DNA of 64,000 nucleotides from Klebsormidium nitens. Lineage: Eukaryota > Plantae > Klebsormidiophyceae. Below the pieces are notes generated by a model. It was given only the letters and a program-made list of their open reading frames with translations, ran no database searches and had not been told where the DNA came from. This document shows, in pieces, positions 8,870 through 57,900 of this stretch. Each line of letters begins with the position of its first letter. Position 1 is the first letter of the stretch. The stretch is taken from positions 49,346 through 113,345 of the forward strand of contig DF237231.1 of NCBI GenBank assembly GCA_000708835.1. Direction: 5' to 3'. The translations under genes and the position numbers were made by a program.

Positions 8870-10268
8870 GGTTCGTTGTGAGGTCCTGGTGCGGAACCCG
8901 TCGTCAGCAGAGGGGTTCCAAGTTCGGAGACAAAGCTTCTTTGATAGGTTAGGCGAGCGAGATTAGGGATTTGGCAGAAAAGAGGACCGAACCTCGTAGG
9001 GTAGGCAGTCGTCGAAAATTGGCAAAATTGATTGGTCACGTACCGGATAGACTGTGTATCAGAGTTCGTAGTGTCGTGGGTGGGCGCAGGACAGCTTACT
9101 GACGCCTTTTCGCGACGGGCTTGTGTATGCGAGTGCCCCGGTCACAGTCAGTGTACGCTAACGTGCTTCTGAGTGCCCCATGCAGATTGGATAGGTTTCG
9201 GATCAGTGAGCTGTTTGTATACGTTAGAGAATAGAAAGGTCGAGCAATCGGCGCACTTGCGAGTAGCAGGCATCGAATGCTATAGAGCGGCAAGCGCACT
9301 GAATAGTACTTTGCCGCAAAAAGCGAACCTCGACAGAGAGCCTGCTCCATGGAGCTTGGATCAGTCTTGCAATCGAGGACGATATGCTGATGAGCATGCT
9401 TACCGCGTACTAAGTACCCTTCATGCATGCATGTGCTATGCTTAACAGGACAGCAACTAAGCGTCATGTACAACTGAATAGATCAAAACGGAAGTTCGTC
9501 GTTGGAGCCTAACCCGTATACTGACCTTGCAACAGTCACGTACTGCCTGAGATAATTTCAGCAGTAAAGAAGAGCTCTCGGGTCACTGCCGGCCATGAAA
9601 ACTAGCTGTCAATGGATCGAACGTTTACAGCTCTGCCTCCCCAATCTTACGATTGATCGGTAGATTGGCCCTAGCTCACCGTACTTTTCGACGCGTTACA
9701 TATTATAGTCTAAGATACCAAGGAATCTGGAAAGTCGCCAGAATCTAAGAGCGCACATGGCCCCTTAAGGCAATATGCACGTAATTTGCCGTCGGCACGC
9801 ATCAAGTTGCACTAATTCAACCCGGAAGTATGATTAAGAGGGTCACTCGAGTATGAGCTTTTGATGGGCATCTTCTCTGCATGTGACCTGCCAAGGCGGT
9901 ACGTTTCAGCATGGTCATGCACCCAGGATTTGGTATGGGTCAAAGGCATAGAAATCAGTCTGTACACGACTAGGATTGTAATTAATACGAATACAGTTGA
10001 AGTGGATTAGATGACCCTGAGACCAACTTGCACATTGTTCAAGAGAAGCGATTATTTGAAATTTGTACATGGATTTACAACAACACTGACTGCTTTTAGT
10101 ACGTCAATCAAAACGGAAAAGAAACCCGAGTTCAGACTCTCCGCAAAGTTCAAAGTCTCCACAAGAATATAATGGGGCGATATGTGTACATGTGAGCCGG
10201 CCTCGACCTTTAGCTCTCCACATGCGATCTGCAACATATACTGGCGATGTCCTTCCAGTGAAGCAGGT

Positions 10269-38515: not shown

Positions 38516-40575
38516 TCACGAGCGGCTGACAAGAGACGGCGCAACACCTCGAGAAGCGAGTAACGACTGCTTCGCTTTGCCATCCCCGGGCGTGACAGCC
38601 CCCCCGGGGCTTGGAACGCTTTCTCTCCGATCCGTTCGACCCGGTTGCGAACCGGACCCTTTTCGACTTTGAAGCTCCTTTACCGAGGCCCGCATGTTGA
38701 ACCCCCTCGTGGCTTCCAGCGTATCCGATGCAGCCTTCGTATACATCTTCGCGTTGAGCCGGTTGGCTCGTTTGGCAAGGGCTGAGCTCTGCTCCAGAAC
38801 CTGTCGAAGAACACTGCTTAGATTTAGTGTTTTGCACGTGATTCGAACGGAGGATGTTAGAAAGAGGATGGGCTATGCTGAACGAGAAGAAGGATCAGGG
38901 TCCTTTTATCATCTTCGACTGTGTACAACGTGTCTCCATCTACTGTAACAAGTTCAACGCCAAAACCAATACGTTGGACCAGCTTCGGCACGTCGGTGCA
39001 CCTTTGGCTGGCCGTCGGCGCCACGAACGGAGAAGATATGTCCACGTTGTGGACAACAGAATTGCAGGTACGTCGAATGCATCGATAAAAATGACTCTCG
39101 GGCTTTTTTCACTCAAAAATGTTCACAGACATTGCAGCCTTGTCCTTCGAACGGCCCCCAGAGAATACTCAGTTCTCTATGCGGGCGCGGTGGGCAACTT
39201 GGGAACGAAAGGACGGCTTGAAACGCCTTTGACAAATGAGACACTTCCGTCAGCTCCAAGGTCTCGTCTCGTTGTTTGTCAAGCATGACAAGAGCCAAAC
39301 AATCACTCGATGTCGGGCTTTACATCCTCGTGAGAAAGTCATGAGGAAGCGGACTCCCGCCTTGCTTCACAGCCTTTCACGGGCGCGCTTTTTGCAGCCG
39401 ACCAGCCACCACTCAATCTTATAAGTCCACCACCTTGCTTGCTTTACAAACGCAGAAACGCCTCCGTCCAGCACTTTACGAACCGCACTCCAAGAGCGCC
39501 TTGCGGGCGCTCAGCCGAGTCCCATTCGTCTCTGATTGCCCCGCTTACCTGGTTGAACTCCTCGGTCTGCTTTTTGATGTCCGCCAATAGCGCGTCCTTT
39601 TCCGCACGCTTTACCGTCAGCCCCCTCTCGAGCGCCTCCAGCTTTGGTTCCACGTGGGCCAGCTCTTTGTCCAGGCGCGCAATCTCTTCCGTGTCTGCCG
39701 CGATCTGCTCTTTGGCAAGCCTGTTCTTTTCCTGTAACAAAACACGAATCATCAGGGCCGAGAAGAATGCTGCAAGCACCGTGGTTTTTGCGACCGCTTG
39801 AGGCGCCGTAATCTTAAGAGCTCGGCGCTCTATGCCATCATGTGGCCACTCAAAAGCCCCCTACGGAGCCCTCACAATAGTAACTGGGAAAAGACTGAAA
39901 TGGTAGATTATTACTCATGTACCAAAGCCCTTGTTTGGGTTGAATCTTGCCATGCCAAAAGGAGGTCGAAATTCTGGTCAAGAAGAAGATGCTTGACTTT
40001 GTTCCGAACTCAAAGAGCAGTCAAGACTTCATCAATTTCGAGATACTACATTCTGAAGGAAAAGCAGCCGACATGTATGAGCACGATTTGAGCGGATGAA
40101 ATGAAGGTACCTTGGGCCTCAAACACTGAGGCCGCCTTCCAATCGCTCAAGCGCAACGGCTCAATGCGGTAAACCACTTTCTTTAAAGTCTAGGCCAATC
40201 GTTTCCTTGCTTCTTACTTGGGGTTTACGCACAGTGAGTAGAAACTGCATATCTTGATTAAGATCGCTGACTGCGCAATTAACAATCAAGACGCTCCTGC
40301 TTCATTATGAGGCTGCCTATGCTTGCTCAGTTCCTCACCTGTAAATGTGCCATCAGCTGGTCTAGATTCTTGATCCCCCTCGACACTGCATTCGGGTCTC
40401 GGTTCATGATGGAGTCTGCCCCGGGCTTCTTGGTCGCCTTTTTGCTCCCTGTGCTGCTAGCTGCGCTGGCTCTGCTGTCAGAGCGACCAGAAAAGCCGGC
40501 CGCCTGCGACGAAAGGGCCCGGGAGCTGCGGGGCCTGCTGACAGCCTTAGGGGTGCCCCCACTGGAGCTGGCCAT
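38516..40575 (-). CDS. Coiled-coil protein of unknown function (~234 aa, 3 exons)
   Basis: Exons 40575-40339, 39731-39549, 38800-38516, all phase 0 with canonical sites. The product includes RGIKNLDQLMAHLQEKNRLAKEQIAADTEEIARLDKEL...EATRGFNM. It loosely recalls green-algal flagella-associated coiled-coil proteins (unverified). Confidence 0.65.
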
Positions 40576-41382
40576 ATTGCTATGACAGCTTTGAAAGTTG
40601 CGTAAGTATGAAAGCTTTTAGAGATGCGTAAGTATGTTGGTGATGTATTACTTCGTGCCTCCTTGAGTCGCACCACGAATGCTTAGTACAGACCTGGAGG
40701 GATGCTGCGAGAGGGAGTGAAAGAGCTCAGGTAGGAGTGAAATCTCTAATTTGTCGCAGAAGATTTGGAGTACACTGTAATGAGAGGGTGACAAGAGCTG
40801 CTCGTTGAGGTTGCTTTGTCTACTAGTATAAGATCGGCACCGAGGAGCTGCCTGTTAGAGCGCTCTTGATCAAACTGAGAGTCTATGCATGGAGCACAAG
40901 GACGTGGGGCTTGCCTCAAAGATTGAAAGCTTTTGTATCTCTTTCCCAATCCGGAAATTCAAGGCTGAGCAGAATGAAGAGCTCGAATGAGCTGTCCCGT
41001 GAGAGTCAATGTTTGCAAGAACGTACGAGTGAGAAATTAGTTTTGCTGCAGCTCAGGCCAAGCGCCAGCTTCAACGTACATGGCACCTTGCCACATCTTG
41101 CACAGGGGATAGCGAGAGATCTGACAAAATATGTGTGAGGGGGGCAGGCTCTGATGTCCAGTTATGCGTGACAGGCGCAGACGTCAGCCGCACTAGTTTC
41201 TTGCGTTATTAGATTTGAGTTGTGGAGCAGGCTGAGCTTCAGCCTGGCTTCAGCTGAATATTGGACCATTTTGCGCGCGCATCTTAATCAGAGCCTTTTG
41301 AAGCCGTCGATATCCCAACGAGACGCCCTTTTGCCGTGGATCTTCGAGCTGGCTAGGCGGCCCTTCTCGCAGCCTGCTCAGA

Positions 41383-44300
41383 ATGGCCACTCGGGAAAAG
41401 TTCCTTGTGAACGTCGTGGTGAATGTGAAGGGCGCCAAGAAGGTCATGGCGTCCAAGAAGAAGCAGAAGATCAGCGGCGTGGCCTCCACGAAGGCTACAA
41501 AAGCATCGCAGGGTCCTCGCGCGAAGAAACCAAAGCTGTCCAACCTGGAACCTGAGTTTGCGCTAGATCCGGCTGAAGCTGAGCATTCAGGACGGCAGGT
41601 TGGACAGCCGGGCCAGTCGTATGAGCTGGAGAACGGCTCGCATCCTTACGGGGTGCGGCCGATGGGGAACATGTACTTTGAGAAGGCGGAGGTGAATGTG
41701 AGGGATGCTGGGCTGGGAGAACTGTGCAATTTGAGTGACGAGCAGGTGTTGGATATTCTGGGGAGGCTGGACTCTAAGGACCTTAGTAGAGTGGCACAGG
41801 TGAGCGATGTGATGGTGGTAGTGGTGGTAATGGCTACGGTAGTTGTCTGAGAGGTGGCATTCACAGCGACATTTGTCTGATGGTCTTTCACACCGACATG
41901 TTTGCAGCATTACGTCTGCAAATCAGCAGGGTGAAAATCGAATATTTGAAGATGAGAGAACGGGGACCATTGGCGTCGATATGCAGCCCATCTGGCTGAA
42001 AAGGTCAGCTTCGCTGGTGGACAGCTTTCCTAATAATTGTGGGGGCGCCTCCAAGGTTTTCATAACCTCCTGTCAAAACTGAATGAACGCTGAGAACCCT
42101 GATCTGTGTCAAATTTCGCCCCCTTTCATTGATCCCAGCTCTTGTTTCCCAGGTTAGCAAGTCGCTGTACGTTTTTGCCCATCACGACGAGCTCTGGCGG
42201 GCGCTCACCCTACAAGAGTTCAGCGGGGGTTTTAGCTACGCCCCAGAAGGCTGGAAGCAAACGTTTGTAACACACCTACTTAACGCCACCGCAAACCCTA
42301 ACCCTAATACAAGCAGCAGGCCCCAGTTGCATTCTCTGCAACAAGACCCTCCAGCGAACGGGGCTAGGCAATCAGGGAAAGAGGAAAGAAGTCTGCAGGC
42401 AAGCGCTTTAGGGACAGCAATTGCTGTACATAAACCGCTGCAAGTATCAGGGTTCTATTCAGATTACCTCTTCCAGTCCTGGCTGTGTGCTAGCATCTCT
42501 GTCAAGCAAGAGTGGTTAGAGCGAAGCACGGTGCCCCGTAGAAGCAACCTCTCACTCCAGCAGTTCATCGACGATTTTGAGCGACCCAATCGACCTGTGA
42601 TCATCACTGATGTTGTAAAGGAGTGGCCGGCGTTTCAGAAGTGGGACCGGGAGTATCTGCTGAAAGCGGTGGGGGATGAGAAGTTTGCATGCGGGCCGGT
42701 AGAGTTTACGCTGGACGAGTATCATGCATACGGGGACTGGGCGAGGGAGGAGCGGCCTCTGTACTTGTTTGACAGGTACGTGCTCTGTTCTCAGTAGGCC
42801 TTTGTTCTGCGTTGGATGTCAGATTTCCTTCCACGTCATGATCAATTTGCCCCGTATCTTTCTTCCAGAACCTGGGAAACCGAACTCAAGGAACGTCCGT
42901 TTCATTTCGTTGACGATGCTCTGTTGTTGGGGGTGGTCTTTGAGAACTCCTTCTGTTCTGCAGTCTCTGCAGAGTACGTTGTGGGTTTGCGCATCCAAGT
43001 TGTGTCAAGCACAGAGCGTCAAGCGCCTCAACATTGTGGACCTTTACATGATCGTGCTAATGCGCCCCGCTGCTTTGCACAGTCAGCATCAGGCACCCAA
43101 TCTTACGCTGCAACAATTCCCTTTGAGCCAGTTCTGATAGATTCTGGTCGCATTAATGGCAAAACAAGACAGGTTTCCAGGTTGCGCCTTTCCTTTTCTC
43201 CTAAAGAAGCGCGGGCTCTAAATCCTTTCTCAAATTCCTTGTGATCGTGCAGCAAGTTCGGTGAAAAGGTCCCCCAATTGGTGGCGGACTACGAGGTTCC
43301 CGAGTATTTCCGGGAGGATCTGTTTGGTTTGCTGGGCGACAAGCGGCCCGACTTCCGGTGGCTCATCATTGGGCCAGCACGATCCGGCAGCTCCTGGGTG
43401 AGCCTCTCGTAGGATGCTCAAGATCGGCTCTCCAACCATGTTCTGACCTTGGGAGGTGTAAGCCACAAATTAGGTAGAGCCGATTCATCCCGTCTGACAC
43501 GCCGGGATTTGGAAATCCAATTGAACAATTGGAAAAGGCTGCCAGAGGAGTTGGACATTCCTGGTTTTGGAGACGATTTGGCGCACAGCCTGAAGTTAGC
43601 TTGCTCCATCCCGCATCTGCCCCTTACAAGTCCACTCTCTTCCGGTTGACACTATTTGCTTTGTCTTTCCCTGGATGGACTCTATCACTCTTTGCTTCTC
43701 GATGAAAATGATCGATCAACGGAGGAGACTACGAAACGCCAAGCTAGAGCGTTTAGTATTCTTCATTCAGCCGCCACACGTTGCGTTCGTCTCACTTCAC
43801 GCGGTCCTCCTGCAGCACATCGATCCAAACTCCACCTCCGCTTGGAACGCCGTCATCAGGGGGTCAAAGAAGTGGATTCTGTACCCCCCCAACATGACGC
43901 CGCCCGGCGTGCGCCCCAGCGCGGACGGCGCTGACGTGGTCGCGCCGGTGTCCATTGCCGAGTGGTTCATGAACTTTTATGACGAGACGAGGTGAGTGTA
44001 AGCCGTGGGTTCGGGTGTTCTGACGGCGTCGGTATACTTCCCCAAAAAGTTTTGCTCGTTCATGCCTGGAGAGCGGCGACCTGCCTTTTTGAAGTCGAGT
44101 CAGGAGTACGGATGATGGATCTGGGCCATCAGAGTCGTGGACTCGATCGGTGACACCTGCACTAGTTGTCGGAAGTCGCCTGGACTCAACCCGCAATTTG
44201 CCCCAAGGCCTTGCTTGTCCTTGGATAGGGATGACCCACAAAACCTTTCTCGTCCAGAACAACGAAAGAAGAATTGTACAGAGAGTGTCAACATGGCTCT

Positions 44301-45732
44301 CACTTTCTCCTTCGCAGACAGGGCGACGCCATGCGACCCCTCGAGTGCATATGCCGAGCGGGCGAGGTGCTCTTCGTCCCACGTGGCTGGTGGCACACCG
44401 TAATCAATCTGGAGGAGTCGGTGGCTGTAACGCAGGTGAGACAGCAGCATACTCTCTTCCGTCGAGAAAAACTGCGTAGCAAACGGAATAGTTGGCGTTT
44501 ATGAGGTCTGCATGCGGCCAGCGACGGTAAAGAGCTCTTTCTGTGGGTCGGAATGATCGAGGCAATCTGTGAGAGCAGAAATTGCGGCAATAGGCGCATA
44601 TGATGCGTCATTTCTCTTGGGAGCTCCTTCACTATCTTTGGCAGTCATGAGTTACGACTTTCTGACTCAGGTTTTGAGTCTGTCGGACTCGTCTCGTTCT
44701 AGTACTCCAGAACCCTGGTGCTCTTTACACTGTCCTTCCGACAATCCCAGTGTCTAACGAAAGCTGGCGGCCTCGCTCGCATACATGCCGACACGTGGTC
44801 GCCTTACTCGCCTTGCTGACGCCACCTCCCCCTTGCAGAACTACGTCAGCAGGCGCAACATCCTGGAGACCCTGTCGTTCCTCGCGCGGCCGAATGCCAA
44901 GGATCTGGTGTCTGGGACGCGAGACAGGGAGAGCCTGCACGGGGCCTTCAAAGCAGCGTTTGAGAACAAGTTTCCGGGTAAGAGTGCGCCTGCTTACCGT
45001 TGAAAGCTTCCACCTTGGACTTCCTACAAGGTCTCTTAGGGCTCTCCTATTATTGATTCGTGGGGGTCGGATGGCTTGGAGAAGCAAGGGATCATTTCAA
45101 GTTTGCCTGCATGTTTGCGAGACAGGGTTCAGTGCGAACGGTTCTGTGGTTGGATCAATTACGGGAAGAAAGAGTGAAGGGCAGTTTTTGCAGACCTTCA
45201 CTTTCAAGCCGTTTTGTGGGCCGCCAGCATTCGAATTGATTTTCTTTCGGGCCTGTGCCTGTTCAGTTCTCGTTCAGCCTTGGAAGGTAGAGGATTCGAT
45301 ATGAGATTTCAGGAACGGTGAAATGGGGAGCTGGTTCTATCATTGGATATGCACGTTCGGTCCTTACAGGCCCCTGCAGCTGCTTTTTCACCTGCGTTAA
45401 CATCAGTCACGGGCCCACTTGACAGAATTCAGTGTCTTCTGGGTTTTGAGAAGTTCTGAACTTTTCATGTTCTCTCTGTAAGGGTCATCTGAAGGACGTC
45501 TTACACGATGTCCTGTGCAGGGGAGTTGGAACGTCTCGAAGCGGAGGCTGCCGCCGAGAAGGCGAGGAAAGAACGAAAGAAGTCGTTTTGGGAGTCCGTC
45601 ACAGACGCAGGCGCGCCGGCGTTCAGTCTTGGGACGGCGCTCGCAGGGGCGACCAGTGAAGAGAAGCCTGCCGCTGCAACCGCCGATCCTTGTCCAGGCG
45701 GCTTCAAGTTTAACTTCGGTCCGTTGAGTTGA
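41383..45732 (+). CDS. JMJ22: F-box + JmjC domain protein (JMJD6 group, Arabidopsis JMJ22-like), ~609 aa, 7 exons
   Basis: Exons 41383-41799, 42153-42775, 43253-43397, 43816-43991, 44318-44435, 44839-44977, 45521-45732. F-box LCNLSDEQVLDILGRLDSKDLSRVAQVSKSLY. JmjC motifs [36 protein letters not shown] and GEVLFVPRGWWHTVINL (HxD...H iron ligands intact). Confidence 0.88.
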
Positions 45733-46528
45733 CAACAGCAGTGAACGCATGAGTTGCCCTCGATACATGGGTCTGACTTTGCACGCACAGTTCTAAGTTC
45801 CGTCAATGGCCGTATGAGTCGACTCTTCTGCAAAGGCAGCCGAAAGCGAACAGGAAACGTCTGTAATCCCATGCGCAAGCAACAACCGTATGGTCGATCT
45901 GTCAGCATCGAGTGGATGTACGTTGAGAGAGCGCGTTATGCAACTTGGCGGCTCTTGGTGCAAGCCTACTGACGAGAGCACATTATCATTCGGTCGTAGA
46001 ATATATGCGTGCTTCATGCATTCCGTTGGAATATTTTGATGCAATGATCAATCATGCTGAATATACCTAGCTCAAGGTCTACACGTACATATACATGTTG
46101 CTGGTTTGCATGAGCTCGAACTCAGCTCCGTGCGGTCAGCTAGCCAGATCGAGAGTTTCCGTATGCATCAATCACGCGGCATCCGATCGACCGGACAATT
46201 GCGCAACGTGCATATCTAAGCAGTGCCGTGAGTCTGGCCACATGTAGATTGAGTGCATGCTACGGACTGTTGTTCATTGCAAGCTTGCTAGATCTAGATC
46301 ATGTTGTCCATGGTATACGTGATCGACTCAGAATAACTCAGTGACACGCGCATGACTGAGTGACTTCCATCGCAAGCTAATTGGGCGCTAGCTGTGGGCG
46401 CAGACATCAAGCATGACCATGCAGACTACGCGTATGCACGGTTTTACTTGCACATTTGGATCAAACCTGTGCTAACATAGAGACGGTATAAGCTGACTAT
46501 TCGCGTGCATAAAGCTTGAAGATGCAGG

Positions 46529-49500
46529 TCACACAACGCGCTGTGTATGGCTCTCGACTCCGTCTGATTGCGGCGTTTGGACGCCGTCCCCCGTCCGATT
46601 GTAGATGTCCCGCCGCGGGAAAACCGCCGCCAGCAGTGCCTGCATCCGTCAGCAAAAGGATCGTCAGCATATGACGAGAGGGAAAACCTGGCCCTTTCTT
46701 TTCAATTCTGGGTTTGTCAACTCTTACGTGATTCCAAAGGAGTCCCCTAATGCGTGCGGGGCATAATGCATGGAGTTGCATCTTCATCCTCGCCCAGCTT
46801 GCTTCGAAGCTACCTCTGAAGACATAAACTTCTAATTTGCAGACGTGGATACCAGTGTCGGCGTCGTAACGTCAGCACTCGTCCAAGAACAGAGCAAATG
46901 CTTTGAAAAGCTCCAATCAGCTTCGCTAATGGTCGCTCTTTTCGTTCTGCATCGGCATTCATTGCGGGGTCCATCGACGGACCTCAGAAACAAAAGCTTT
47001 TCAACAAACAGAGGAGAGAAAGAGCGAAAAAGAAGATCGAAGGATGATAACTGAGAATCAAGGGTCAGCGAGTATCTCGCCTCTTGCTCGCTCTCCGGAA
47101 TAAGGTTGAGATACGGCCGCAAAGCGCGACGCCGGTTGACGAAGTAGTTGGTCGTCTTCTGCATGCTGCCCGGGTTGAAACGGTACCAGTAAACCGGGTC
47201 CGATAGCACGTCGACCTGACGCCAAAGACGAAATTGGTTTTGATTGCCCGGTTGAAAGACCAGTTCGTATTGCGGAACACAGTTGATTTGCACGCACGAG
47301 GGGCTGAGAACAAGGAGACGTTAAAGCAGGATCGCACCGGATGACGAAGCTCAGGAGGCGACGGATTATTAAGGTGATCAGCGACTGCATTCAGCTATCC
47401 ACCTCTCCGCTTCTGCAGATACCCCCAAAACGCACTTTCGAGTCTCACGTACGTCAGCAGAAGGATCACACCGGACGAGGTTTGACAAGTTGCAAACCGG
47501 TTCCAGCCATTCCATCTTGAGAGCACCAGTTGAAGCCTCACCCGAAACCCCCGCAGGGTGGCGTTTGCATACATCTCCCAGTCCTCGTACCCAATCCCGT
47601 AGTCTTCCGTGTACCCCCCAATTTCGAAAAAGGAAGACTTGCGCACGAAGCAATTGGCGTCGCCGAAGCAGTTCTTGAACGCGCCCACGTCGCTGCTGCC
47701 CCCCAGGAACAAATACGACGGCCGATCCTCTGCAAAGATGGGGAACTTTGGTTTTGGTTTTCCTAATACATTCGCTTTCAAAAGTAATTGCTTGAATATC
47801 TCCTATTCTGTGTACCTCTTGCTTAAAGATGTACCAACTTGCTTGGATCCAGATCCTGATATTTCTGATGCTGCTTGACGACTCTCTCCGTTCGTTGGAG
47901 GTCTTTCCCCTGAGCTACTAATAGGCTAGAGTCGTTGGACTGTCCGCCGGCGGAACTCTACTTCGATGGTCAGATTGGATTGCCGTACTCTTGATTCAAC
48001 TATGCAACCCTCTCTCGATGACTCCCGAATAATCTCTGCGGGTAAAGCGGCTTATTGAGACCGCTCAGAGCTTTTGCAAAGCAGAGCCCCAAGCTCTCCG
48101 CTCAGCTTTCCGCACACTGCAAGGCGGAGATTCCGCTCACTTTCGGACGGCGGCCGTGCGTCCGCGGACCAGAAGAAGTCGACGAAGCTGGTCATGACGT
48201 CAGCGCCGCCCCACTCCATGGCCCGCACGTACGTGCTGACCTCATGCGGCTTCGCCCAGTTGTCGTCGTCCATGAACAGAATGTACTTCCCTGCGGGACG
48301 CCACGTGTTTGACCTCAGTGCGACGTTACTCGCAATGAGAGCCATCTTTGCGAATCCTAGGGTCACGACTTGATTATGCAACCCCCCAGAACCTGGGGCT
48401 GTGCTAAATCGGCTACAGAATGCTCCTAAAAGGGCAAGTTCACATGGTCGAGGGGCAGACACATAAGTTAACCGTTGTTCTCAAGCCTGTGCCTGGATCC
48501 TGGCCAGATTGCAAGGAACTCGTAGATTTGACCAGTGGTCTGGAGTCAATCGGAATGGCAAGAACTCGAATTGCGGAGACAAGGGAGGCAAAGACTCGCT
48601 TTATTCTCCTTTAGAAGTCGTTCAAACACTCAATAAGATATCAGAGAAGATGGTCAGCTGGGAAGAGCAAACCTAGCATGAATCTCTAGAGGCCTACCTT
48701 TCGCAAGTCGCGCGCCCGCGTTCCGCGCCGCGCCTAGGTACGCGTTCGCCTGCCTATAGACCCTCCAACCCCGCGACTGGAATACGGGTTCTATCTCGTC
48801 CAGAAACCGGATGGCGTCTTCTTGCGTGCTCCCGTCGTCGACTAAAACGACCTCGAAACTCTCCGCCGGGTAATCCTGCGCCTCTAGTGACTCGATCGCC
48901 TGAAAAAGGCAGGGGCGTTATTACATCCGCGAAGGAAGTGAGGAATGGTCTTTTTAAAGCGATTGATTCGAGCTCTTGTTTCGACCTTACCCGCGTGGGC
49001 ATCTTTCAAGGACAGTGGCGTTCGAGACCTTTTTGAAGCCTATGGAGGATTCTCAAAAAGCAAAGCAAAGTTGATGAATCATCCTTTTGAATGTGCATTT
49101 TCATTCTGAGGACCATACCCGTTCGTCGTATCAAAATTTTGAGAACAGACGACTCGCTTCATCCAGAAGGCACGGCACAGGCCACTTTCCAGGAAGTAAT
49201 TCTCAGCCTCCAGCAACCAAATCTTGAACGATCTCGGCAGATCCCCCCGGGCCAATCTCACCTGTTTGCAAAGGGCAGGCCGGTTGAAGTGCGTCATCAC
49301 CACCGAGACTAACGGCCGGTCCTTTCCGGCCAGGTTTGCCTCTAACCGCGCCCATCGCTCGTCGTCCCTGGCGCGCGTCGCGGCCGCGGTACGCGCGTGC
49401 CACGTCATCCAGGCGTTCTCGTTCGCGGCCGCGTCGACGGCCGGGCGCGCGGGCCGGACGCCGTCCAAAAGGGCGCGTGACAGGCGGTCGACCAGGCTCT

Positions 49501-52500
49501 TTAACCGAGGGGAAAGAGACGTGGGTAAGTGTGCGTCGACTGACTGATCCCTCGCTCGCAAGGGTAGGAATTTGAGAAGAATGCGACGAGTGATGATTCG
49601 ATTTCCTCAGCTTCGATCTTTGCTTGGAGCGCGAAACTTCAGTCCATAAAGCGGAAGACTGGCCGGATTCAAGCAATTTTCTTCCGATGCAACTGTTCAG
49701 CTTGCACAGCATATATCCAGAAGCCACGACGCGCTCTCCTCTTTTGCAGGCACCCTCGGCTCTTTCTGGAAGATGGATAAGATTTCTCAAACCTATTTAG
49801 GACGTACCTGCACTGTCGGCTCGAACAGCGCGTGCGGCCGGTCACTGGGGTGTATTAAGTCGCTGATGCCGCCCACGTCAGCAGCAACGAAGGGGATCCC
49901 CAGCTCCGCGCACTGCGAGAACGAAGGAGCTGATTCGACACCTTCGCTTCTAAATCAGTCACTTGGGAGATGCTCGTAGATTAGGACCTTTCTCTGTGCG
50001 TCGAGAAGACGTGATTTGCTTTTGTGCCCAGCGAAGAGGCTTTGATTGCGAGAGTCCGAGAAGGCGTACTTTTTCAAGGTCCCTTTCAGTTGCTGACGAA
50101 CAGACGAAAAGAGTGACCGCCTTGCGCTCTTCGCCTTTTCTCTGAAACTACATCCGTTCACTTATTGACTGACAGTTTTAGCAGAGGTTTTCGGCTCTCA
50201 CCTCATAAACAGTGTACGGTGAGTTCTCCACTTTGGACGGCATCACCGCCAGCCTTCCCGGCCCCCGCAAATATTCTTTCGCCTCCAGGGGGTCCATTCG
50301 CGTCACAATCTTCCAGGGAAGAGCCCCCCACCGCCGCGCCCGCCGCTGGACGTACTCTACCCCCCACTCGGCCTCAATGATCGCGCTACGGCCCAGAAAC
50401 GTGACCCGCTCTAGTTTCGAGAGGACTTCCGCTCGCTGCGCCCCGCTCAGTTGCATCCGAATGCTCCGGGCTTCATCTGCCTTGACTATGCGCTGATGGG
50501 CTGTTGCTTGCGTCTCGTTGTTAACCCTAGCAACTGCACTCTCTGTTAAAGGCGTCCCCACGACTTGCCCTTTACTTCGGTCTCCGCTTTCCCCTTCATC
50601 GGCTTCTTTGGGCGATTCCAAAACCTCCAGAGACCCATCACCGATCTCGGTAAAACCCCCCAGAATCTCGTCGATCGCGTCGCAGAAAGTGACGGCGCCC
50701 TTGCGCGTTTCGAGCCGGCCAAAGAAGACCAGCTCGAAGACAGTCAACGAACTTCTCGGCTTCCCCCGGGTGTGGTCGGGGCTCCAGTCAGTCTTCGGCA
50801 GCAGATTGGGTTGCACGAATGTCCGTTCCAGGTCTAGTTGCCAACCCTCGCTTTCCATCCACTGCGCAGGCAAGCACCCGGTCATCACTTGGGGGCCGAA
50901 GCGTATGGCGATACACTTGCGAGACTATTTCGACTTTTGGCAAGGGATTGATGGCGTGCGGTCCTACATATCGCTAGTATCCGCTTTGCCAATGACACTT
51001 AATCTCGACAATGTTCGCGGAGACTGAGCCGGCCTAGAAAGGGGCAGAAGCGCAACCTCAATAATGGGTGTGACCGAAACACGACCGCCTTTATCGACGG
51101 TGAAAAGTACAGGTCGTTGCCGTCATCTCCCCAGTCATTTCTCATAGGATACAGTGACTCCTCGCGACTGGAAGCGCCCAAAAGAGTACCGGAAACGAAC
51201 GGACAGCTTCGACGGAAGCGTCAGACGGAAGGCGACTACGAAACGCAGCGGAATGGAGCGGAACGCGGAGCGAGCGAAGTTTGCCCCCACCTGCAGTATG
51301 TACTGACTGGGCGCGACCACGTAGTCCGCGAGCGCCACCGCGCGCTGCTCCATAAAATTGCCCTCCAAGCTGCGGACAGCGGTAATGGGTTCGCCGTTAC
51401 CGGCCTTCTTCGCCCAGAAGCTCGGCCCGTGCACACCCACAACTAGAGCGGTGCCCTTGAGCGCAAGGCCCTGTTTCTTGGCGAGGACGGAGTAGTAGCC
51501 GGCGCCCTGGGAGAGTTGAATGGGGGCAGTCTTGGGAACAGGGCCTCTCTATTTTTTTGTCGCTAGGATCCATTTTGTATGATCTACTTCGTTATAACCA
51601 GCGGAAAGTTATGGAATTTGAAGACTCTGATATCGAAGTACGAAGCAGAAAGACGGTGTGCGATGTTGGCGCCTTTGCTTTCACACAAAGGTGACGTCAC
51701 GTGTGACGTCGGTCACACGTGTACGGCCGCACCTGATAGTCCGGGAAGTGCACGACGTCGAAGCTCCGCTCCCGCAGGAACCGCAGCACTTCGTGCGATT
51801 CGATCAGCGCTTTCGGCACGTGATGCGTCCCGGGGGGGGGGCGCTGTAGCCCTAGCAAGGCGATCCCGGCTTTCGCATAGTGCAAAACCCACTCCTGGAA
51901 AGTGCCGCGCATCGAGACCTTCCCCATGGTGAAGAGAATGGTCACCTGCGAACGAGAGGAGGGTGATGAAAATTGCTGATGGAATTACGGTTCGCTTTGC
52001 TGACGGGTTGGTCATTTGTCTGCTTTGGTGAGATGTGAGGTTCTCAGGACCCAGAGTCAAGTGATAAAGGAAAGGAGACGCTTTGTAATGCAGCGAAGTT
52101 GGGAGATTTGCATAGCACTCTGCGTCGTATTGTGGAGACGAGAAACGGCGTAGGAAAGCCCATCTAATTTCCCCGATGCCACTGAATACTTCCATTTGCC
52201 GCGTCAATCAGAGTTGTGCTGAGACATAACTAGTCGAGATCCTCCGACAAGTATGAAGGTATCCAGGCTTCCGGCAATTTCACATCAAAATCTAGAAGAT
52301 GGCAACTTTTTTCTCCGAGCAGGACGATTGCCGGCATTCAAATCTGCAAAACAAGCCCACCTGATGACCCCGCTCGGCGAGGCTGTAAGCCATCGTCGTA
52401 AACGCTGTTCCAATGCCGCCGTTTGTGATCGGCCCAGCCACCTCGTTCGTCACAAAGCATACTTGCAACTTTCGATCGAGTTCTTTGACAATCCCCTTCT

Positions 52501-53578
52501 CTTCTATGCTCGAAAACCCTCTGTATTTGGCAGCCCCCTGTTTGGCCTGGCTGCAATCAACACCGCCGTAGCCTGCTTTGCAAACGCACCGCCTGCTTAT
52601 GCACCGACCCTGATTGGAACAGTCGTTTGAGCAAGCGGTTGATCCTAGACTCCTATGATTTTCTTCTGACGCATTGTGAGCGTTAGCATCCTCCTCTCTT
52701 ATCAAGTTCTGATCCGAGTGTAAAGATCTGCTGGTGACATCAGTATCCGTTGACGAACTCGCAGTTGCCTCAACAGTTGACACTTTGCTGACGCTTCCGT
52801 TCCCTTTGCTTTGAGTGGCATCCGAGTCTTCCCCAGTGCCGTTTTGCAGCTGGCCACTTATGGAGCCCCAGCGCCATAAGCGGGCGTTCATTTTGTCCAT
52901 TGTCCGTACCGCAGCCCCTATAAGCACCTTGTAGCGAGCGATATCCGCCGCCCGCTTATCGTCCTCCGCAAACTTGTCCGTAACTTCTGAGCCTGGCGAC
53001 ACATCCGTGATTACCCCGGTCATACTTTTCTCGACTTCCTTTGACTTCTCTTCCAGCGTGCTTGCGTCGAGCTCAGAGGTTGACTTGTTTTCCGGTGCTG
53101 CTGTCTCCCTAGCTGTCCCTAACAACTCGCTATGTGAATGAGGGTTAGTGTTAACCTGCGGCCGTTTGAGTCTGTCAAACCCCAGGAGGGCTGCCGCTGC
53201 AACCCGCCCGTAACCTGGGTGGGCGTCCCCAAGCAACCCACTTTCTAACCCACTATCTAACCCACTTTTTAGACCACTATCAAACCCACTGCCTTGACCA
53301 CTCTTAAACTCGACCTGAGCTGTACTTTTTGACTCATCGTGGACCCTGACTGAAAGAGGGTCCGCCAGAGCAAGACGTGGGTTCCCTGCTTCAACCCCAA
53401 ACGTACCACTTGCACCATCAGACAAAAGGCTCTCAGTATTCACTGAGCTGATGACTTGCGGTCTCGCTCTCGTGCCTTTGCTGTCGGTGCACTCAACCAG
53501 TGGTGCCAGCATTAGAAGCAGGCAAGCAGCCCACGAGCCGAGCACCGCTGGCGAGGACCTTGCTCTGCTTTGTGCCAT
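46529..53578 (-). CDS. Secretory-pathway bifunctional glycosyltransferase: signal/TM - S/T-rich stem - EGF-like - GT4 (GT-B) - GT2 (GT-A), ~1,144 aa, 11 exons
   Basis: Exons 53578-52361, 51945-51733, 51506-51291, 50861-50202, 49912-49808, 49498-49262, 48899-48698, 48290-48141, 47729-47542, 47215-47081, 46639-46529; the last intron is a putative GC-AG. EGF CSNDCSNQGRCISRRCVCKAGYGGVDC. GT4 NGGIGTAF, VHFPDYQG, ENSPYTVYE (Ex7E), DVGGI. GT2 VSVVMTHFNRP, VDDGS, YLGAARN, FMDDDN, YEDWE. Confidence 0.85.
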
Positions 53579-54947: not shown

Positions 54948-57900
54948 ATGGAAGGCATCCAGCAGCTGCAGCAGCTTGGGCCCTCGCCGGCTAAGCCCAG
55001 CAAGGCGAAGAAGCAGCCAAACCAGGCACCACAGCCCAAGACGCTGTACCCTCCGCCGGAGCTGCTGGAAGATCTATGCAGGTAAGGCAGTCATGTCCTT
55101 CTCAGTCAGGACACATTGTAAGCTTTGAGTGCATCTTATGGAGTGTGACAGCTCTCCAATCAGGAAGAGCGCTGGCCAAGCACATGATTGCCAGTTAATC
55201 TTGGGTTTAAGGTGCTCAGCCATGGTGGTAAGTGGCACATTGATACGTCCGAGAACGTGAGAGCTGCCGAATGGAAGCTGCATTACAGCACTTGTATCGC
55301 AAGGTATTCAGAATGTTAAGAACCAGGCGTCCTAGTATCTGCACCATTCCGTTTGAGTCCATCATCGGCTCTGCGTTATACTAAGAGATCGTGCCGACTA
55401 TGCGTGCGCTTTTCAGCATCGACTATGTTTGTGCGGGTTTGAGGCTTGTGCTTCGGATTTGTGCCTGCGTTTCTTTTTTCATTCATCTAAGATCGATCAA
55501 TCTGCTGGTGCCGCCTTACAGGTTTTCCCCAACCATCTGTGGGACTTTCTTGATGTTGCCACCAACCCACTTTGTAACATCGAAGTTCCGCGTTCCTAAT
55601 CAATTTGGTGACCACCAGATCTCTCTGTCTTGATGCCAGTTAGCGCACTATATGTCCGCTCCCATCATTGGTATTCTTTTGCGCTCAATCCTCCCACGGG
55701 TTACAACACCACCTCTGAGCGCACCGCTTCTCTACTGAAGAACGCAGAGGTTTATTCCATCGCTGCAGTCGCGTCATTCTTCACGCCCTCAAAAAAGGGC
55801 ACAAAGTTTTTGAGCCCATGGCCCTTTTGTTCTAGCGCCTGAATCCAATCTTCTCAATGTAACACTCCTTGCCAAGCTCTTCCCCCCTAATTGCCCCTTC
55901 TTCCCTTCGTTATGTATCCAAGTAACACAAAACCCCGCTCGTCTTCTTTCTCGCAACTGCATTGTGCTCAATCACCCCTTGAGAAGAGCTCAAGCCTTCT
56001 GAGTTTATCCGCTGTCTCCTTTGACAACTGAAAACAATCCGTACCTGCACCTTCTCAGTCCCCCACTGATCCTTGCTCTTTCAGAGGCGTGACGAGTTGC
56101 AGACTTACCCCCCCTCTCCTCCTTGCAGTCGCTTCGTCCTCAACGCCCCCGGAGAAGAGCTCAAATCCTTCACGCACAACCGCTCTTGCTTTGGTTATTG
56201 ACGAGAGTATATACCTGCACCTCTCTGCTCTTCCCTAATTCTATTCGTGGCTCACTTCCACCTGCATTTGAGTTGACTGTTGCCCCCCCTCTCTGCAGCC
56301 GCTTCGTCCTTAACGCCCCTGAAGAAGAGCTCAAGTCATTCGAGCGCATCGGCTTCCTCATCGAGCTCGCGCACTGGTTCTACGAGGACCACGTGCGCGA
56401 GCAACAGCCCGCTTTACGCAGCTTTTCGCTCAGCGACTTCATCGCCGCAATGTTCAAGCACTGCGCGGCGCTCCGGCCGTACGGCGAGTTTGCGGACGAG
56501 ATCTACCGCAGCTTTACGGACTACAAAGTGAAGGTGCCCACGACGGGGGCGATTCTGCTGAACCCAGCAATGGACAAGGTGGGGCAGCGGCCACTGTGAA
56601 GGGGGCCAGTTGATCAAGGGTTGTCTCTTTCTCAGCTTCTGTCCTTTTCGATTTCGGAGGTGTGATAAAGAGAGTTGGATCAAAGTTCAATACGAGGCTT
56701 GGTGACATGGGTGTTAGGAACAGCGGTTGCCCTTCAAAATCAATGGTAAAGTGTGCTTTTTGGGATTGAGGAGCGTCTCTCTAGGCAGGCTTCTCTAGAA
56801 ATGAATTTCGCAGTATCCTTGTCACATCGTATTCAAAACGATGACGCGTGGAAAGCTACTTCATGTTCTGACTCTTTGAGGTCCTTCTCAAATCCGCTGT
56901 CCTTTTCTATAGCCTTCTTCTGAAAGGCCTGAAAATCAAGCGGCCTTTCAGGAAAGAAGATGCACATCAGGTTGTCTGAGCGCAACTTTTCAGGTGTCAG
57001 TAATGGTTAGCGTCCACTCATTCTTGCTTGAAGCACGACAAATGCTTCTAACCAAGCGAGGTCAAGAAATCAGAAGGCTGGTACAAAGAGCCTGCCCGTT
57101 TTGAGTCAGCTAGAACCTTCTTTCAGTGCTACAGAGCTTCTACGGGCAACACGATCAGTAAGGGCGCTCCAGCCAAACCAAAGCAATGTCCAATCAGCCT
57201 GGTGGCCGCATTTTCGCAGTGCGTGATGGTGAGGGGCTGGAAGCAGCACTCGGCGTGGGGCTTTCCAAAGGGGAAGAAGAACTTCCAGGAGGAAGATCTG
57301 GCATGCGCAATCCGGGAGGTGAGGCGACGCTCCTGTAGCAATCGAGCCGAGCGATTTTGAATTCTCTTGTGTTTGCGACAAGGTTCAGCTTTTGCTAAAT
57401 ACCGGCCTTGAGATGCATCCAGGCTTCTTACTCCTTCCCTCTGAGAAAAGGTATGTGCCACAGAGTTGCCCTGAAGGAAAGAGGTTAAGATCGTCAGGAG
57501 CAAAGGTAAGGCGAAGGACGGCGACGAGCCGAGGAGTTGACGACTCTTTCGCTCCGCTTTTGGAGCACAAGAAAGTTGCAAAAATCACTTGAATCGAGTT
57601 CCATCATTTCCGATGTGACCCGTGCAAACATTCGGTAAGTTCCTGATTACAAACCATTCCCGCAGGTGGAGGAAGAGATTGGGTACAACATTGGCGGCCA
57701 CGTAAACCCGGAAGACTTTCTCGAGGTCGAGATTGCCGAGCAGCGCTGTCGGTTGTACATAGTCACGGGCGTCGAGGAGAGCACGCCCTTTCTAACGCGG
57801 ACCAAGAAGGAGATCGGGGTGAGCCGCTGCGGACGTCCAATCTGCTTGAGGGGTCTGTGCAGAAACGTGTCATGTGAAGGGAGTTCTCGATGCCGAGCTT

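What the first reader, a model, noticed from the sequence alone, without database searches (positions are those of the whole stretch)
46529..53578. EGF-containing bifunctional GT4-GT2 glycosyltransferase: candidate self-contained glycan polymerase
Seen: one spliced ORF with an N-terminal hydrophobic signal/anchor, S/T/D/E-rich stem and one EGF-like repeat. These are followed by a GT4 domain with Ex7E intact and a GT2 domain with DDGS, DxD (MDDDN) and EDWE intact. Established: GT4 enzymes are retaining and GT2 inverting, and tandem two-GT proteins are typical of bacterial capsule, O-antigen and S-layer glycan synthesis where they build repeating units. Inference: a bacterial-type module, possibly horizontally acquired, since intronised and retargeted to the secretory lumen. 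It could make an alternating alpha/beta wall or mucilage polysaccharide by a route I do not know from land plants.
Basis: partly seen in the sequence, partly recalled or inferred. Interest (0 to 1): 0.7.

Follow-up and report, generated by a model that had tools for sequence, protein, structure and literature searches.

The report
Bacterial-type double glycosyltransferase in an alga
This is a real, spliced gene of the alga Klebsormidium. Its secreted-pathway protein joins an EGF module to two different sugar-transferring enzymes of bacterial ancestry. The design is shared with other early-branching green algae, was not found in land plants, and its sugar product is unknown.

Summary
On the minus strand, 53578-46529, lies one 11-exon gene that matches the public model KFL_002820190 of Klebsormidium nitens.

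- **Protein:** an N-terminal signal or anchor, a roughly 285-residue Ser/Thr/acidic stem, one six-cysteine EGF, a GT4 domain (GRLETRKG, Ex7E) and a GT2 domain (DDGS, DDD, EDWE).
- **Expression:** spliced contigs confirm three junctions. None covers the GT4-GT2 join.
- **One chain:** this rests on orthologues, namely Tetraselmis transcripts, an intronless Pycnococcus gene and hundreds of bacterial proteins.
- **Bacteria:** the GT4-GT2 unit is common there (410 loci), in flagellar islands and in ABC-transporter or other glycan gene clusters.
- **Algae:** EGF-bearing versions form one strongly supported clade (prasinophytes, Tetraselmis, Mesostigma, Klebsormidium). No land-plant relative was found.
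- **Location:** many chlorophyte orthologues end in K/H/RDEL, which suggests the ER lumen. Klebsormidium has no such ending.

So the retargeted bacterial-type module is supported. A wall or mucilage polymerase is untested and somewhat disfavoured. The public model appears to lack 22 N-terminal codons and a conserved 45-codon exon. I rate it a new variant of a known kind, of moderate interest.

The parts
46529..53578 (-). Whole coding span of the gene (11 exons, 3435 nt CDS, 1144 codons by my model); equals KFL_002820190 of Klebsormidium nitens
   Evidence: The public protein P0182 is identical to exons 1 (from Met23) to 9 and to exon 11.
52361..53578 (-). Exon 1 (406 codons): signal or anchor, disordered stem with 4 N-glycosylation sequons, the EGF, and the first about 37 residues of GT4 (KLQVCFVTNEVAGPITNGGIGT)
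   Evidence: Junction 52361|51945 is seen in a spliced contig.
53486..53578 (-). N-terminal signal peptide or type II signal anchor (MAQSRARSSPAVLGSWAACLLLMLAPLVEC). The public model starts inside it, at Met23 (53512).
   Evidence: it is the only hydrophobic 19-residue window in the protein (residues 9-31, Kyte-Doolittle 1.97). Algal orthologues have N-terminal signals too.
52553..52633 (-). Single EGF-like domain with six cysteines (CSNDCSNQGRCISRRCVCKAGYGGVDC)
   Evidence: PF23106 E = 8.4e-05, 23.0 bits against a cut-off of 24.3. The cysteine pattern is kept in the seven algal orthologues of alignment A1 and is absent from bacterial relatives.
51733..51945 (-). Exon 2 (GT4 N-lobe)
51291..51506 (-). 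Exon 3 (GT4 N-lobe; invariant HGP, W, E, D)
   Evidence: One contig (51324-51591) runs unspliced across its acceptor.
50202..50861 (-). Exon 4 (GT4 C-lobe): FGRLETRKG phosphate-binding motif, a Klebsormidium-specific acidic insert of about 85 residues (about 50660-50412), and Ex7E (ENSPYTVYE, 50228-50202)
   Evidence: Junction 51291|50861 is seen in a spliced contig.
49808..49912 (-). Exon 5 (end of GT4: CAELGIPFVAADVGGISDLI)
   Evidence: It is collinear with residues 431-465 of the Tetraselmis transcript protein.
49262..49498 (-). Exon 6: interdomain helix and first strand of GT2 (PLVSVVMTHFNRP)
   Evidence: The model of the orthologue has a long helix, 488-519, joining the two domains.
48698..48899 (-). 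Exon 7 (GT2: DDGS at 48839-48828, GAARN)
48141..48290 (-). Exon 8 (GT2: LFMDDDN, DDD at 48270-48262)
   Evidence: Junction 48141|47729 is seen in a spliced contig.
47542..47729 (-). Exon 9 (GT2: GDAN, GGYTEDYGIGYEDWE; EDWE at 47586-47575)
47081..47215 (-). Exon 10 (45 codons, VDVLSDPVYWYRFNPGSMQKTTNYFVNRRRALRPYLNLIPESEQE). It is conserved GT2 C-terminal core that the public model skips, and it is followed by a predicted GC-AG intron.
   Evidence: tblastn with the Chloropicon C-terminus gives E = 3e-14 and 73% identity. It is 69% identical to Tetraselmis residues 719-760. It corresponds to the core strand 720-731 of the model. No RNA contig covers it.
46529..46639 (-). Exon 11 (ALLAAVFPRRDIYNRTGDGVQTPQSDGVESHTQRVV, stop TGA 46531-46529). 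It has no KDEL-type ending.

Best explanation
**What it is.** This is a nuclear, intron-bearing, weakly expressed Klebsormidium gene (KFL_002820190). It encodes a secretory-pathway enzyme with the following parts:
- an N-terminal signal peptide or type II anchor;
- a long disordered, probably glycosylated stem;
- one EGF module;
- a rigid two-enzyme unit, in which a GT4 domain (GT-B fold, a family that retains anomeric configuration) is joined by a long helix to a GT2 domain (GT-A fold, DxD-dependent, an inverting family).

**Origin.** The two-enzyme unit descends from a widespread bacterial family of cytoplasmic GT4-GT2 glycan-building enzymes. An ancestor of green algae, or an earlier eukaryote, acquired it once. 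That lineage added a signal peptide and the EGF, and in many cases a C-terminal K/H/RDEL ER-retrieval signal. Klebsormidium later added introns and the stem.

**How it most likely works.** Inside the ER or early secretory lumen both active sites are live. They add two different sugars in succession, one alpha-linked by GT4 and one beta-linked by GT2. The acceptor is more probably a glycoprotein or glycan precursor than a bulk wall polysaccharide. The EGF would serve as a disulfide-stabilised docking or substrate-recognition module.

**Shown and inferred.** Gene structure, domains, motifs, relatives and the single clade are shown. Topology, activity of both sites, linkage types and acceptor class are inferred.
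For: **Gene and identity**
- establish the gene model and its match to the public protein.
- Spliced contigs confirm three junctions.
- The neighbours are ordinary eukaryotic genes: F-box/cupin, Dcp2 and a CS-domain gene.

**Domains and motifs**
- Pfam domains score above their cut-offs.
- 38 columns are invariant across 52 algal, amoebozoan and bacterial proteins. They include the GT4 R/K/E residues and the GT2 DD-S, D-D and D of EDWE, and all are kept in Klebsormidium.

**One chain**
- Exon-by-exon collinearity holds in most of the 150 nearest cluster representatives.
- It also holds in the Tetraselmis transcript proteins.
- Pycnococcus has one intronless ORF, and a marine eukaryote contig carries a single ORF.

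**Fold**
- The AlphaFold model of the Tetraselmis orthologue has pLDDT 89.1 and pTM 0.88.
- Its halves match BshA, MshA and glycogen synthase (GT-B), and RmlT, TarS and AvpGT (GT-A).

**Bacterial ancestry**
- 410 loci were confirmed across many phyla.
- Identity is 45-50% over the best local alignment.
- Bacterial members have no hydrophobic N-terminus and no EGF.

**Single algal clade**
- Support is 100 in both FastTree and IQ-TREE.

**Lumenal residence**
- There is an N-terminal signal and a six-cysteine EGF.
- K/H/RDEL endings occur in nine orthologues.
Against: - No RNA contig covers the GT4-GT2 junction or exons 10-11 in Klebsormidium.
- The Klebsormidium protein has no KDEL ending and no second membrane segment. 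Its retention in ER or Golgi is therefore assumed, not shown.
- No member of the family, bacterial or algal, reaches any curated equivalog cut-off.
- No close solved structure exists, so donor and acceptor are unknown.
- The structure was modelled on the Tetraselmis orthologue, not on the Klebsormidium protein.
- The tree is unrooted and its backbone is weak. The direction of transfer is the parsimonious reading, not a proven one.
Confidence: 0.6

Rival explanations
1. The two domains alternate on one growing chain, so the protein alone polymerises a repeating alpha/beta disaccharide that becomes a wall or mucilage polysaccharide. It would be a green-algal counterpart of LARGE1, EXT or bacterial O-antigen polymerising enzymes.
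For: - A retaining-type and an inverting-type domain sit in a fixed arrangement (pTM 0.88).
- Some bacterial relatives carry the automatic label 'O-antigen biosynthesis protein'.
- Some bacterial relatives sit beside ABC transporters, as chain-polymerising enzymes of the ABC-dependent pathway do.
- The GT2 half resembles the chondroitin polymerase K4CP by sequence (E = 3.4e-07).
Against: - K/H/RDEL endings in nine orthologues point to the ER lumen, whereas matrix polysaccharides are made in the Golgi or at the plasma membrane (established knowledge).
- No processivity feature could be tested.
- Many bacterial relatives lie in flagellar gene islands, where such enzymes would be expected to decorate a protein (inferred from gene context).
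- The carriers are very different: thecate, scaly, naked and walled algae share no known wall polymer (my own knowledge).
Confidence: 0.2
2. Only one of the two domains is catalytic. The other has become a structural, lectin-like or acceptor-binding module.
For: Multi-domain glycosyltransferases with one degenerate domain are common (my own knowledge). An earlier report of this scan describes such a case in this genome (s1-305488).
Against: The signature residues of both domains are invariant across 52 sequences from bacteria to algae and are kept in Klebsormidium. For GT4 these are R326, K331 and E430 of the Tetraselmis numbering. For GT2 they are D561, D562, S564, D615, D617 and D706.
Confidence: 0.1
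3. The single gene is an artefact. Either two adjacent genes (EGF-GT4 and GT2) were merged by prediction, or the locus is bacterial contamination or a very recent transfer.
For: No RNA contig spans exons 5-7.
Against: - Introns 5 and 6 (309 and 362 nt) look like the others, and the frame stays open across the spliced exons.
- Orthologues carry both domains in one transcript or one intronless ORF.
- Spliceosomal introns, three of them confirmed by spliced contigs, and flanking eukaryotic genes exclude contamination.
- A single algal clade that includes Mesostigma and the prasinophytes excludes a recent transfer.
Confidence: 0.03

Closest known systems
Bacterial GT4-GT2 fusion glycosyltransferases, uncharacterised and often auto-annotated 'O-antigen biosynthesis protein' or 'glycosyltransferase involved in cell wall biosynthesis'. 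Examples are Vicinamibacterales P0199, Benzoatithermus flavus P0219/P0237 and Methylacidimicrobium tartarophylax WP_142660146.1.
   Same: - Same domain order, the same interdomain helix and the same invariant residues.
- 45-50% identity over the best local alignment, which covers about half of the query region.
- The conserved C-terminal 'YR..SM...LRPYL' segment is also shared.
   Different: - The bacterial proteins have no signal peptide, no EGF and no KDEL, and they are cytoplasmic.
- They lie in flagellar islands, ABC-transporter clusters or methyltransferase-rich glycan clusters.
- Some carry TPR or methyltransferase modules instead of an EGF.
- None is experimentally characterised as far as my searches reach.
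Green-algal orthologues: Tetraselmis A0A061RCB2, Cymbomonas CYMTET_30320, Chloropicon primus 'glycosyltransferase', Pycnococcus provasolii 'glycosyl transferase' and Mesostigma Mv02685.
   Same: Signal peptide, one EGF, then GT4 and GT2. Identity is 49-65% in the catalytic part, and they form one clade.
   Different: - Klebsormidium has a stem of about 285 residues before the EGF and an acidic insert of about 85 residues in GT4.
- It has ten introns, whereas Pycnococcus has none.
- It lacks the conserved 'PTGLAAEG.SRF' tail and the K/H/RDEL ending.
LARGE1/LARGE2 (GT8 + GT49) and EXT1/EXT2 (GT47 + GT64): animal lumenal bifunctional glycan polymerases.
   Same: The working principle may be the same: one retaining-type and one inverting-type domain in a single lumenal chain, building alternating alpha/beta linkages (established knowledge).
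   Different: The CAZy families are unrelated, and no such entry appears in the hit lists I read (all 26 sequence matches; the 50 best of at least 500 structural matches). Those enzymes are Golgi type II membrane proteins. Polymerase activity is not shown here.
Soluble ER-lumen glycosyltransferases with KDEL-type retrieval signals (POGLUT1, EOGT, POFUT1, UGGT).
   Same: They combine a signal peptide with a KDEL-like ending, as most chlorophyte orthologues do. They act on folding or folded secretory proteins (established knowledge).
   Different: They belong to different families (GT90, GT61, GT65, GT24) and have a single catalytic domain. The Klebsormidium protein itself has no KDEL.
Structural neighbours of the model: BshA (6n1x), MshA (3c48), Pyrococcus glycogen synthase (3fro) and the methylmannose-polysaccharide mannosyltransferase (7qsg) for the GT4 half; RmlT (8bz6), TarS (5tzi), AvpGT (9jma) and WrtF (9omn) for the GT2 half.
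   Same: The folds are the same (Foldseek E about 1e-13 to 1e-11).
   Different: Identity is only 13-20%. The donors of these neighbours are diverse (UDP-GlcNAc, ADP/UDP-Glc, GDP-Man, dTDP-Rha, GDP-Fuc), so the fold match says nothing about the sugar used. No solved protein has both domains.

Membership tests
CAZy GT4 (retaining GT-B glycosyltransferases) | Sequence membership: N-lobe and C-lobe Pfam models above the gathering score | tested here: met
   On P0182: PF13579 56.6 bits (cut-off 29.7), PF13439 51.9 (28.5), PF13692 34.3 (27) and PF00534 30.1 (26.4).
CAZy GT4 (retaining GT-B glycosyltransferases) | Ex7E motif and the basic phosphate-binding R/K in the C-lobe | tested here: met
   ENSPYTVYE lies at 50228-50202 and FGRLETRKG in exon 4. 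R326, K331 and E430 (Tetraselmis numbering) are invariant in 52 sequences.
CAZy GT4 (retaining GT-B glycosyltransferases) | GT-B two-Rossmann fold | tested here: met
   This was tested on the Tetraselmis orthologue, not the window protein. The model has pLDDT 89.1, and the best Foldseek matches are BshA, glycogen synthase and MshA.
CAZy GT4 (retaining GT-B glycosyltransferases) | Retention of anomeric configuration in the product | not testable with these tools
   This needs an enzyme assay with NMR or linkage analysis.
CAZy GT2 (inverting GT-A glycosyltransferases) | Sequence membership (PF00535) above the gathering score | tested here: met
   86.6 bits against a cut-off of 23.3, E = 2.3e-24 on P0182.
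CAZy GT2 (inverting GT-A glycosyltransferases) | Nucleotide-binding DDGS, metal-binding DxD and the acidic ED catalytic-base motif | tested here: met
   DDGS is at 48839-48828, DDD at 48270-48262 and EDWE at 47586-47575. The corresponding columns are invariant or nearly so.
CAZy GT2 (inverting GT-A glycosyltransferases) | Complete GT-A core including the C-terminal strand | tested here: inconclusive
   The core is present in the genome as exon 10 (47215-47081), but the public model skips it and no RNA contig covers it.
EGF-like domain (tenascin/teneurin type) | Six cysteines in the C-x3-C-x5-C-x4-C-x-C-x8-C spacing, and a Pfam EGF model above the gathering score | tested here: inconclusive
   The cysteine pattern is present and conserved in the seven algal orthologues of alignment A1. 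PF23106 scores 23.0 and 21.4 bits, just under the 24.3 cut-off, in Klebsormidium, and 27.7 bits (above it) in Tetraselmis.
Bacterial chain-polymerising glycosyltransferases of ABC-transporter-dependent O-antigen or glycan pathways | Repeated alternating transfer on one lipid-linked chain, with the gene next to Wzm/Wzt-type transporter genes | not testable with these tools
   Some bacterial relatives sit beside ABC-transporter genes, but others lie in flagellar islands. No activity is known for any member, and the algal gene has no such neighbours.
ER-resident soluble proteins retrieved by the KDEL receptor | A cleavable signal peptide plus a C-terminal K/H/RDEL | tested here: not met
   The Klebsormidium protein ends in ...HTQRVV, and no hidden exon with such an ending was found in 40001-47300. 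Nine chlorophyte orthologues do meet the feature.

The most novel reading that the evidence does not exclude
Early green algae (and perhaps some amoebae) kept a bacterial two-enzyme glycan synthase. They moved it into the ER lumen and gave it an EGF docking module. There it builds, by itself, a repeating alpha/beta glycan on secretory proteins. This would be a green-lineage analogue of LARGE-made matriglycan, and a type of protein glycosylation not known from land plants. Its bacterial forerunners would decorate flagellin or build O-antigens.
Probability: 0.2. Interest if true: 0.75.

Novelty: new variant of a known kind. Interest (0 to 1): 0.45.

Why it matters
**Algal glycobiology.** Glycan synthesis in early-branching green algae and streptophyte algae is poorly mapped. 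Many of their wall, scale and glycoprotein sugars have no assigned enzymes. Here is a conserved and apparently doubly active enzyme with a clear bacterial pedigree and secretory targeting, and no relative was found in land plants. It is a concrete candidate for a glycan pathway lost on the way to land plants.

**Gene transfer.** It is a tidy case of a bacterial cytoplasmic enzyme refitted for the eukaryotic lumen with a signal peptide, an EGF and a KDEL ending.

**Bacteria.** Bacterial members lie in flagellar islands in at least three separate groups of loci, next to Maf-type or TPR proteins. This flags an unstudied enzyme family for flagellin or surface glycosylation.

**Annotation.** The public Klebsormidium model seems to lack its signal-peptide start and a core GT2 exon. 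Anyone who clones it needs to know this.

Tried and rejected
1. **Coccidian parasite genome.** This was my first guess, from GC content and intron style. I rejected it because earlier notes named Klebsormidium and the exons are identical to KFL_002820190.
2. **Splice of exon 9 to the acceptor at 47304.** This gives a frame clash. Homology resolved it: the true exon 10 starts at 47215.
3. **A hidden last exon with the algal 'GLAAEG..SRF...KDEL' tail.** None was found in 40001-47300.
4. **Giant-virus carriage of the marine 820-residue orthologue.** There was no match in IMG/VR, and the 78-kb contig carries cellular eukaryotic genes.
5. **Named function from curated models.** No NCBIfam equivalog comes near its cut-off; the best is EpsD at 75.8 bits against 370.
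6. **A close solved structure.** There is none. Only fold-level matches were found.
7. **Shared intron positions as a test of antiquity.** The Cymbomonas gene is not on record and Pycnococcus is intronless.
8. **Literature on this gene or family.** Nothing was found in the held library.
9. **A Pfam census of about 200 neighbouring ORFs in bacterial loci through one large reference list.** I prepared it but did not send it, to avoid a very long typed call. I used a local tblastn seed search instead.
10. **The joined 11-exon protein.** The public model P0182 and the orthologue P0004 served as references.


Full report
**What is there.**
- The finding lies on the minus strand. Reading the reverse complement I derived exons with canonical splice sites.
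- The exons are 53578-52361, 51945-51733, 51506-51291, 50861-50202, 49912-49808, 49498-49262, 48899-48698, 48290-48141, 47729-47542, 47215-47081 and 46639-46529.
- Together they make 3435 nt, or 1144 codons. Introns are 226-441 nt. Nine are GT-AG, and the last is a predicted GC-AG.

**Organism.**
- My first impression of a coccidian genome was wrong.
- Earlier notes of this scan name the genome as Klebsormidium. I confirmed this: the public protein KFL_002820190 of Klebsormidium nitens (P0182, 1077 residues, UniRef name 'EGF-like domain-containing protein') is identical to my exons 1-9 and 11.
- The flanking genes are ordinary eukaryotic ones: F-box/cupin, the decapping enzyme Dcp2, and a CS-domain gene that I read as NudC-like from its sequence.

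**Expression and splicing.**
- No run on record as RNA holds the stretch. Two small runs of the same species hold about 5% of its words.
- Their contigs, laid on 46701-52700, reproduce three of my junctions to the base: 52361|51945, 51291|50861 and 48141|47729.
- One contig (51324-51591) runs unspliced across the exon 3 acceptor.
- Spliced contigs can only come from RNA, so the gene is transcribed, at low level.
- Nothing covers exons 5-7 (the GT4-GT2 join) or exons 10-11.

**Domains and motifs.**
- Exon by exon the Pfam signals are weak. On the public protein they are clear:
  - GT4 N-lobe: PF13579 at 56.6 bits and PF13439 at 51.9 bits.
  - GT4 C-lobe: PF13692 at 34.3 bits and PF00534 at 30.1 bits.
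  - GT2: PF00535 at 86.6 bits, E = 2.3e-24.
- The EGF has six cysteines in the tenascin/teneurin spacing. It scores just under the PF23106 cut-off in Klebsormidium (21.4-23.0 against 24.3) and above it in Tetraselmis (27.7).
- The quoted motifs are all present: Ex7E (ENSPYTVYE), DDGS, MDDDN and EDWE.
- In a 52-sequence alignment of algal, amoebozoan and bacterial relatives, 38 columns are invariant. They include the GT4 R, K and E and the GT2 DD-S, D-D and the D of EDWE. Both sites therefore look live.
- The only hydrophobic segment is residues 9-31. The stem of about 285 residues is rich in S, A, G, T, D and E and has four N-glycosylation sequons.

**One chain or two?**
- A search of 1.84 billion cluster representatives with exon 4 alone found 995 relatives.
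- Local BLAST of each exon against the best 150 shows that most carry matches to exons 1-10 in the same order in one protein.
- These include transcript-derived Tetraselmis proteins, a single intronless ORF in Pycnococcus and a single ORF on a 78-kb marine eukaryote contig.
- The fusion is therefore old and general, although it is not directly shown by Klebsormidium RNA.

**Relatives.**
- EGF-GT4-GT2 proteins occur in Tetraselmis, Cymbomonas, Chloropicon, Pycnococcus, Mesostigma and many marine metagenome contigs. The Bathycoccus relative belongs to the same clade, but no EGF family is listed for it and its model starts with GST-like domains.
- Directly after these come bacterial GT4-GT2 proteins with no EGF and no hydrophobic N-terminus. 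They are 45-50% identical to the Klebsormidium protein over the best local alignment, which covers about half of the query region.
- A scan of one genome per prokaryotic species confirmed 410 loci. The best 80 span Acidobacteriota, Planctomycetota, Verrucomicrobiota, Pseudomonadota, Cyanobacteriota, Actinomycetota and others.
- No land plant or other streptophyte appears among the best 120 hits of either large search.

**Trees.**
- In a 218-row FastTree and a 62-row IQ-TREE with a mixture model, the algal sequences form one clade with support 100 and a long stem.
- The order inside the clade is unresolved.
- The nearest outsiders are a protosteloid amoeba transcript (Clastostelium, on a long branch), a Methylacidimicrobium protein and a metagenomic bacterial protein. 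A dictyostelid (Synstelium) relative sits nearby.
- The amoebozoan relatives whose ends I could read (Clastostelium, and a metagenomic protein that groups with Synstelium) have a signal or membrane anchors but no EGF.
- The trees are unrooted. A bacterial source is the parsimonious reading.

**Localisation clue.**
- Nine chlorophyte orthologues end in KDEL, HDEL or RDEL. The Bathycoccus group ends in -VEL or -IEL. Tetraselmis and Klebsormidium have no such ending.
- No hidden exon supplies one in Klebsormidium.
- A signal peptide, a disulfide-rich EGF and a KDEL ending together argue for a soluble ER-lumen enzyme in most lineages.
- In Klebsormidium the N-terminal segment may act as an anchor.

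**Structure.**
- The Tetraselmis orthologue models with pLDDT 89.1 and pTM 0.88. It shows an EGF, a GT-B domain, a long helix (488-519) and a GT-A domain.
- Foldseek finds only fold-level neighbours at 13-20% identity, with many different donor sugars, and no two-domain template.
- A sequence search of the PDB agrees.
- No curated NCBIfam model comes near its cut-off.

**Bacterial context.**
- In Vicinamibacterales the gene lies between MotA/MotB, an MptE-like gene and a large methyltransferase. I read the MptE-like gene as Maf-type from my own knowledge.
- In a gammaproteobacterium it follows FlgH, FlgI, a Rod-binding/glucosaminidase gene (FlgJ-like), FlgK and an FlgL-like Flagellin_N gene, then a TPR gene and a GDP-mannose-dehydratase-like gene.
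- A seed search finds such flagellar neighbours in about 17 of the 80 loci. About 14 loci have an ABC-transporter gene nearby.
- Other clusters hold radical SAM enzymes, methyltransferases, a TPR-GT41 gene or GT9 genes, or tandem paralogues with ABC transporters.
- The ancestral job is glycan building on surface structures. In several lineages the target is probably flagellin, which is a protein.

**Verdict.**
It is wrong if read as a Klebsormidium-specific acquisition.
- It is unproven, and somewhat disfavoured, as a wall or mucilage polymerase.
- I found no paper on the gene or family in the held library.

**Limits.**
P0182 and P0004 stood in for it.
- Donors, acceptor, linkage and processivity cannot be read from sequence.

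Noticed in passing
window 53512-53578 and 47081-47215: The public model KFL_002820190 starts at an internal Met (53512) and so loses the first 22 codons of the signal or anchor. It also skips a conserved 45-codon GT2 exon (47215-47081), whose downstream intron begins with GC instead of GT. The corrected protein would have 1144 residues rather than 1077.
   Followed up: yes
window 51324-51591: One contig of run X1 runs unspliced from exon 3 into intron 2. This could be a retained intron, pre-mRNA or a DNA trace in the library.
   Followed up: no
P0167, P0176, P0179, P0156, P0173, P0175, P0177, P0154, P0180 (C-termini): Chlorophyte orthologues end in KDEL, HDEL or RDEL after a conserved 'PTGLAA(E/Q)G.SRF' tail, which implies soluble ER-lumen residents. 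Tetraselmis and Klebsormidium lack the ending, and the Bathycoccus group ends in -VEL or -IEL.
   Followed up: partly
L083 (Vicinamibacterales), L084 (Gammaproteobacteria), L002-L012, L024, L028, L038, L040: Bacterial GT4-GT2 genes sit inside flagellar gene islands (MotAB with an MptE/Maf-like gene and a methyltransferase; FlgH to FlgL with a TPR gene and a sugar dehydratase). This suggests an unstudied flagellin-glycan enzyme family. Other members lie next to ABC transporters.
   Followed up: partly
P0097/P0263 (Clastostelium recurvatum), P0110 (Synstelium polycarpum), P0275: Amoebozoan relatives of the GT4-GT2 unit carry a signal anchor, or a signal peptide plus a C-terminal membrane segment, but no EGF. 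This is either a second eukaryotic uptake or an older eukaryotic presence. The Clastostelium sequence comes from a transcriptome, so contamination is not excluded.
   Followed up: partly
P0185 (Bathycoccus prasinos, 1080 aa): The Bathycoccus model has GST-like domains before the GT4-GT2 part, and no signal peptide is visible at its N-terminus. It may be a merged gene model. The near-identical marine clusters (P0188, 331 members) are 705 residues long.
   Followed up: no
window 50412-50660: A Klebsormidium-specific acidic, low-complexity insert of about 85 residues lies in a surface loop of the GT4 C-lobe. Other algae have 10-30 residues there, and Mesostigma has a different large insert upstream.
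   Followed up: no
window 41383-44000 (+), 56123-56599 (+), 60881-62219 (-): The neighbouring genes are an F-box plus cupin/JmjC-like gene, the mRNA-decapping enzyme Dcp2 (box A, E = 8.6e-27) and a CS-domain (NudC-like) gene.
   Followed up: partly
L082 (Benzoatithermus flavus) 5856-10316; L085 3435-12457: Some bacteria carry two GT4-GT2 paralogues in tandem or close together in one glycan cluster.
   Followed up: no
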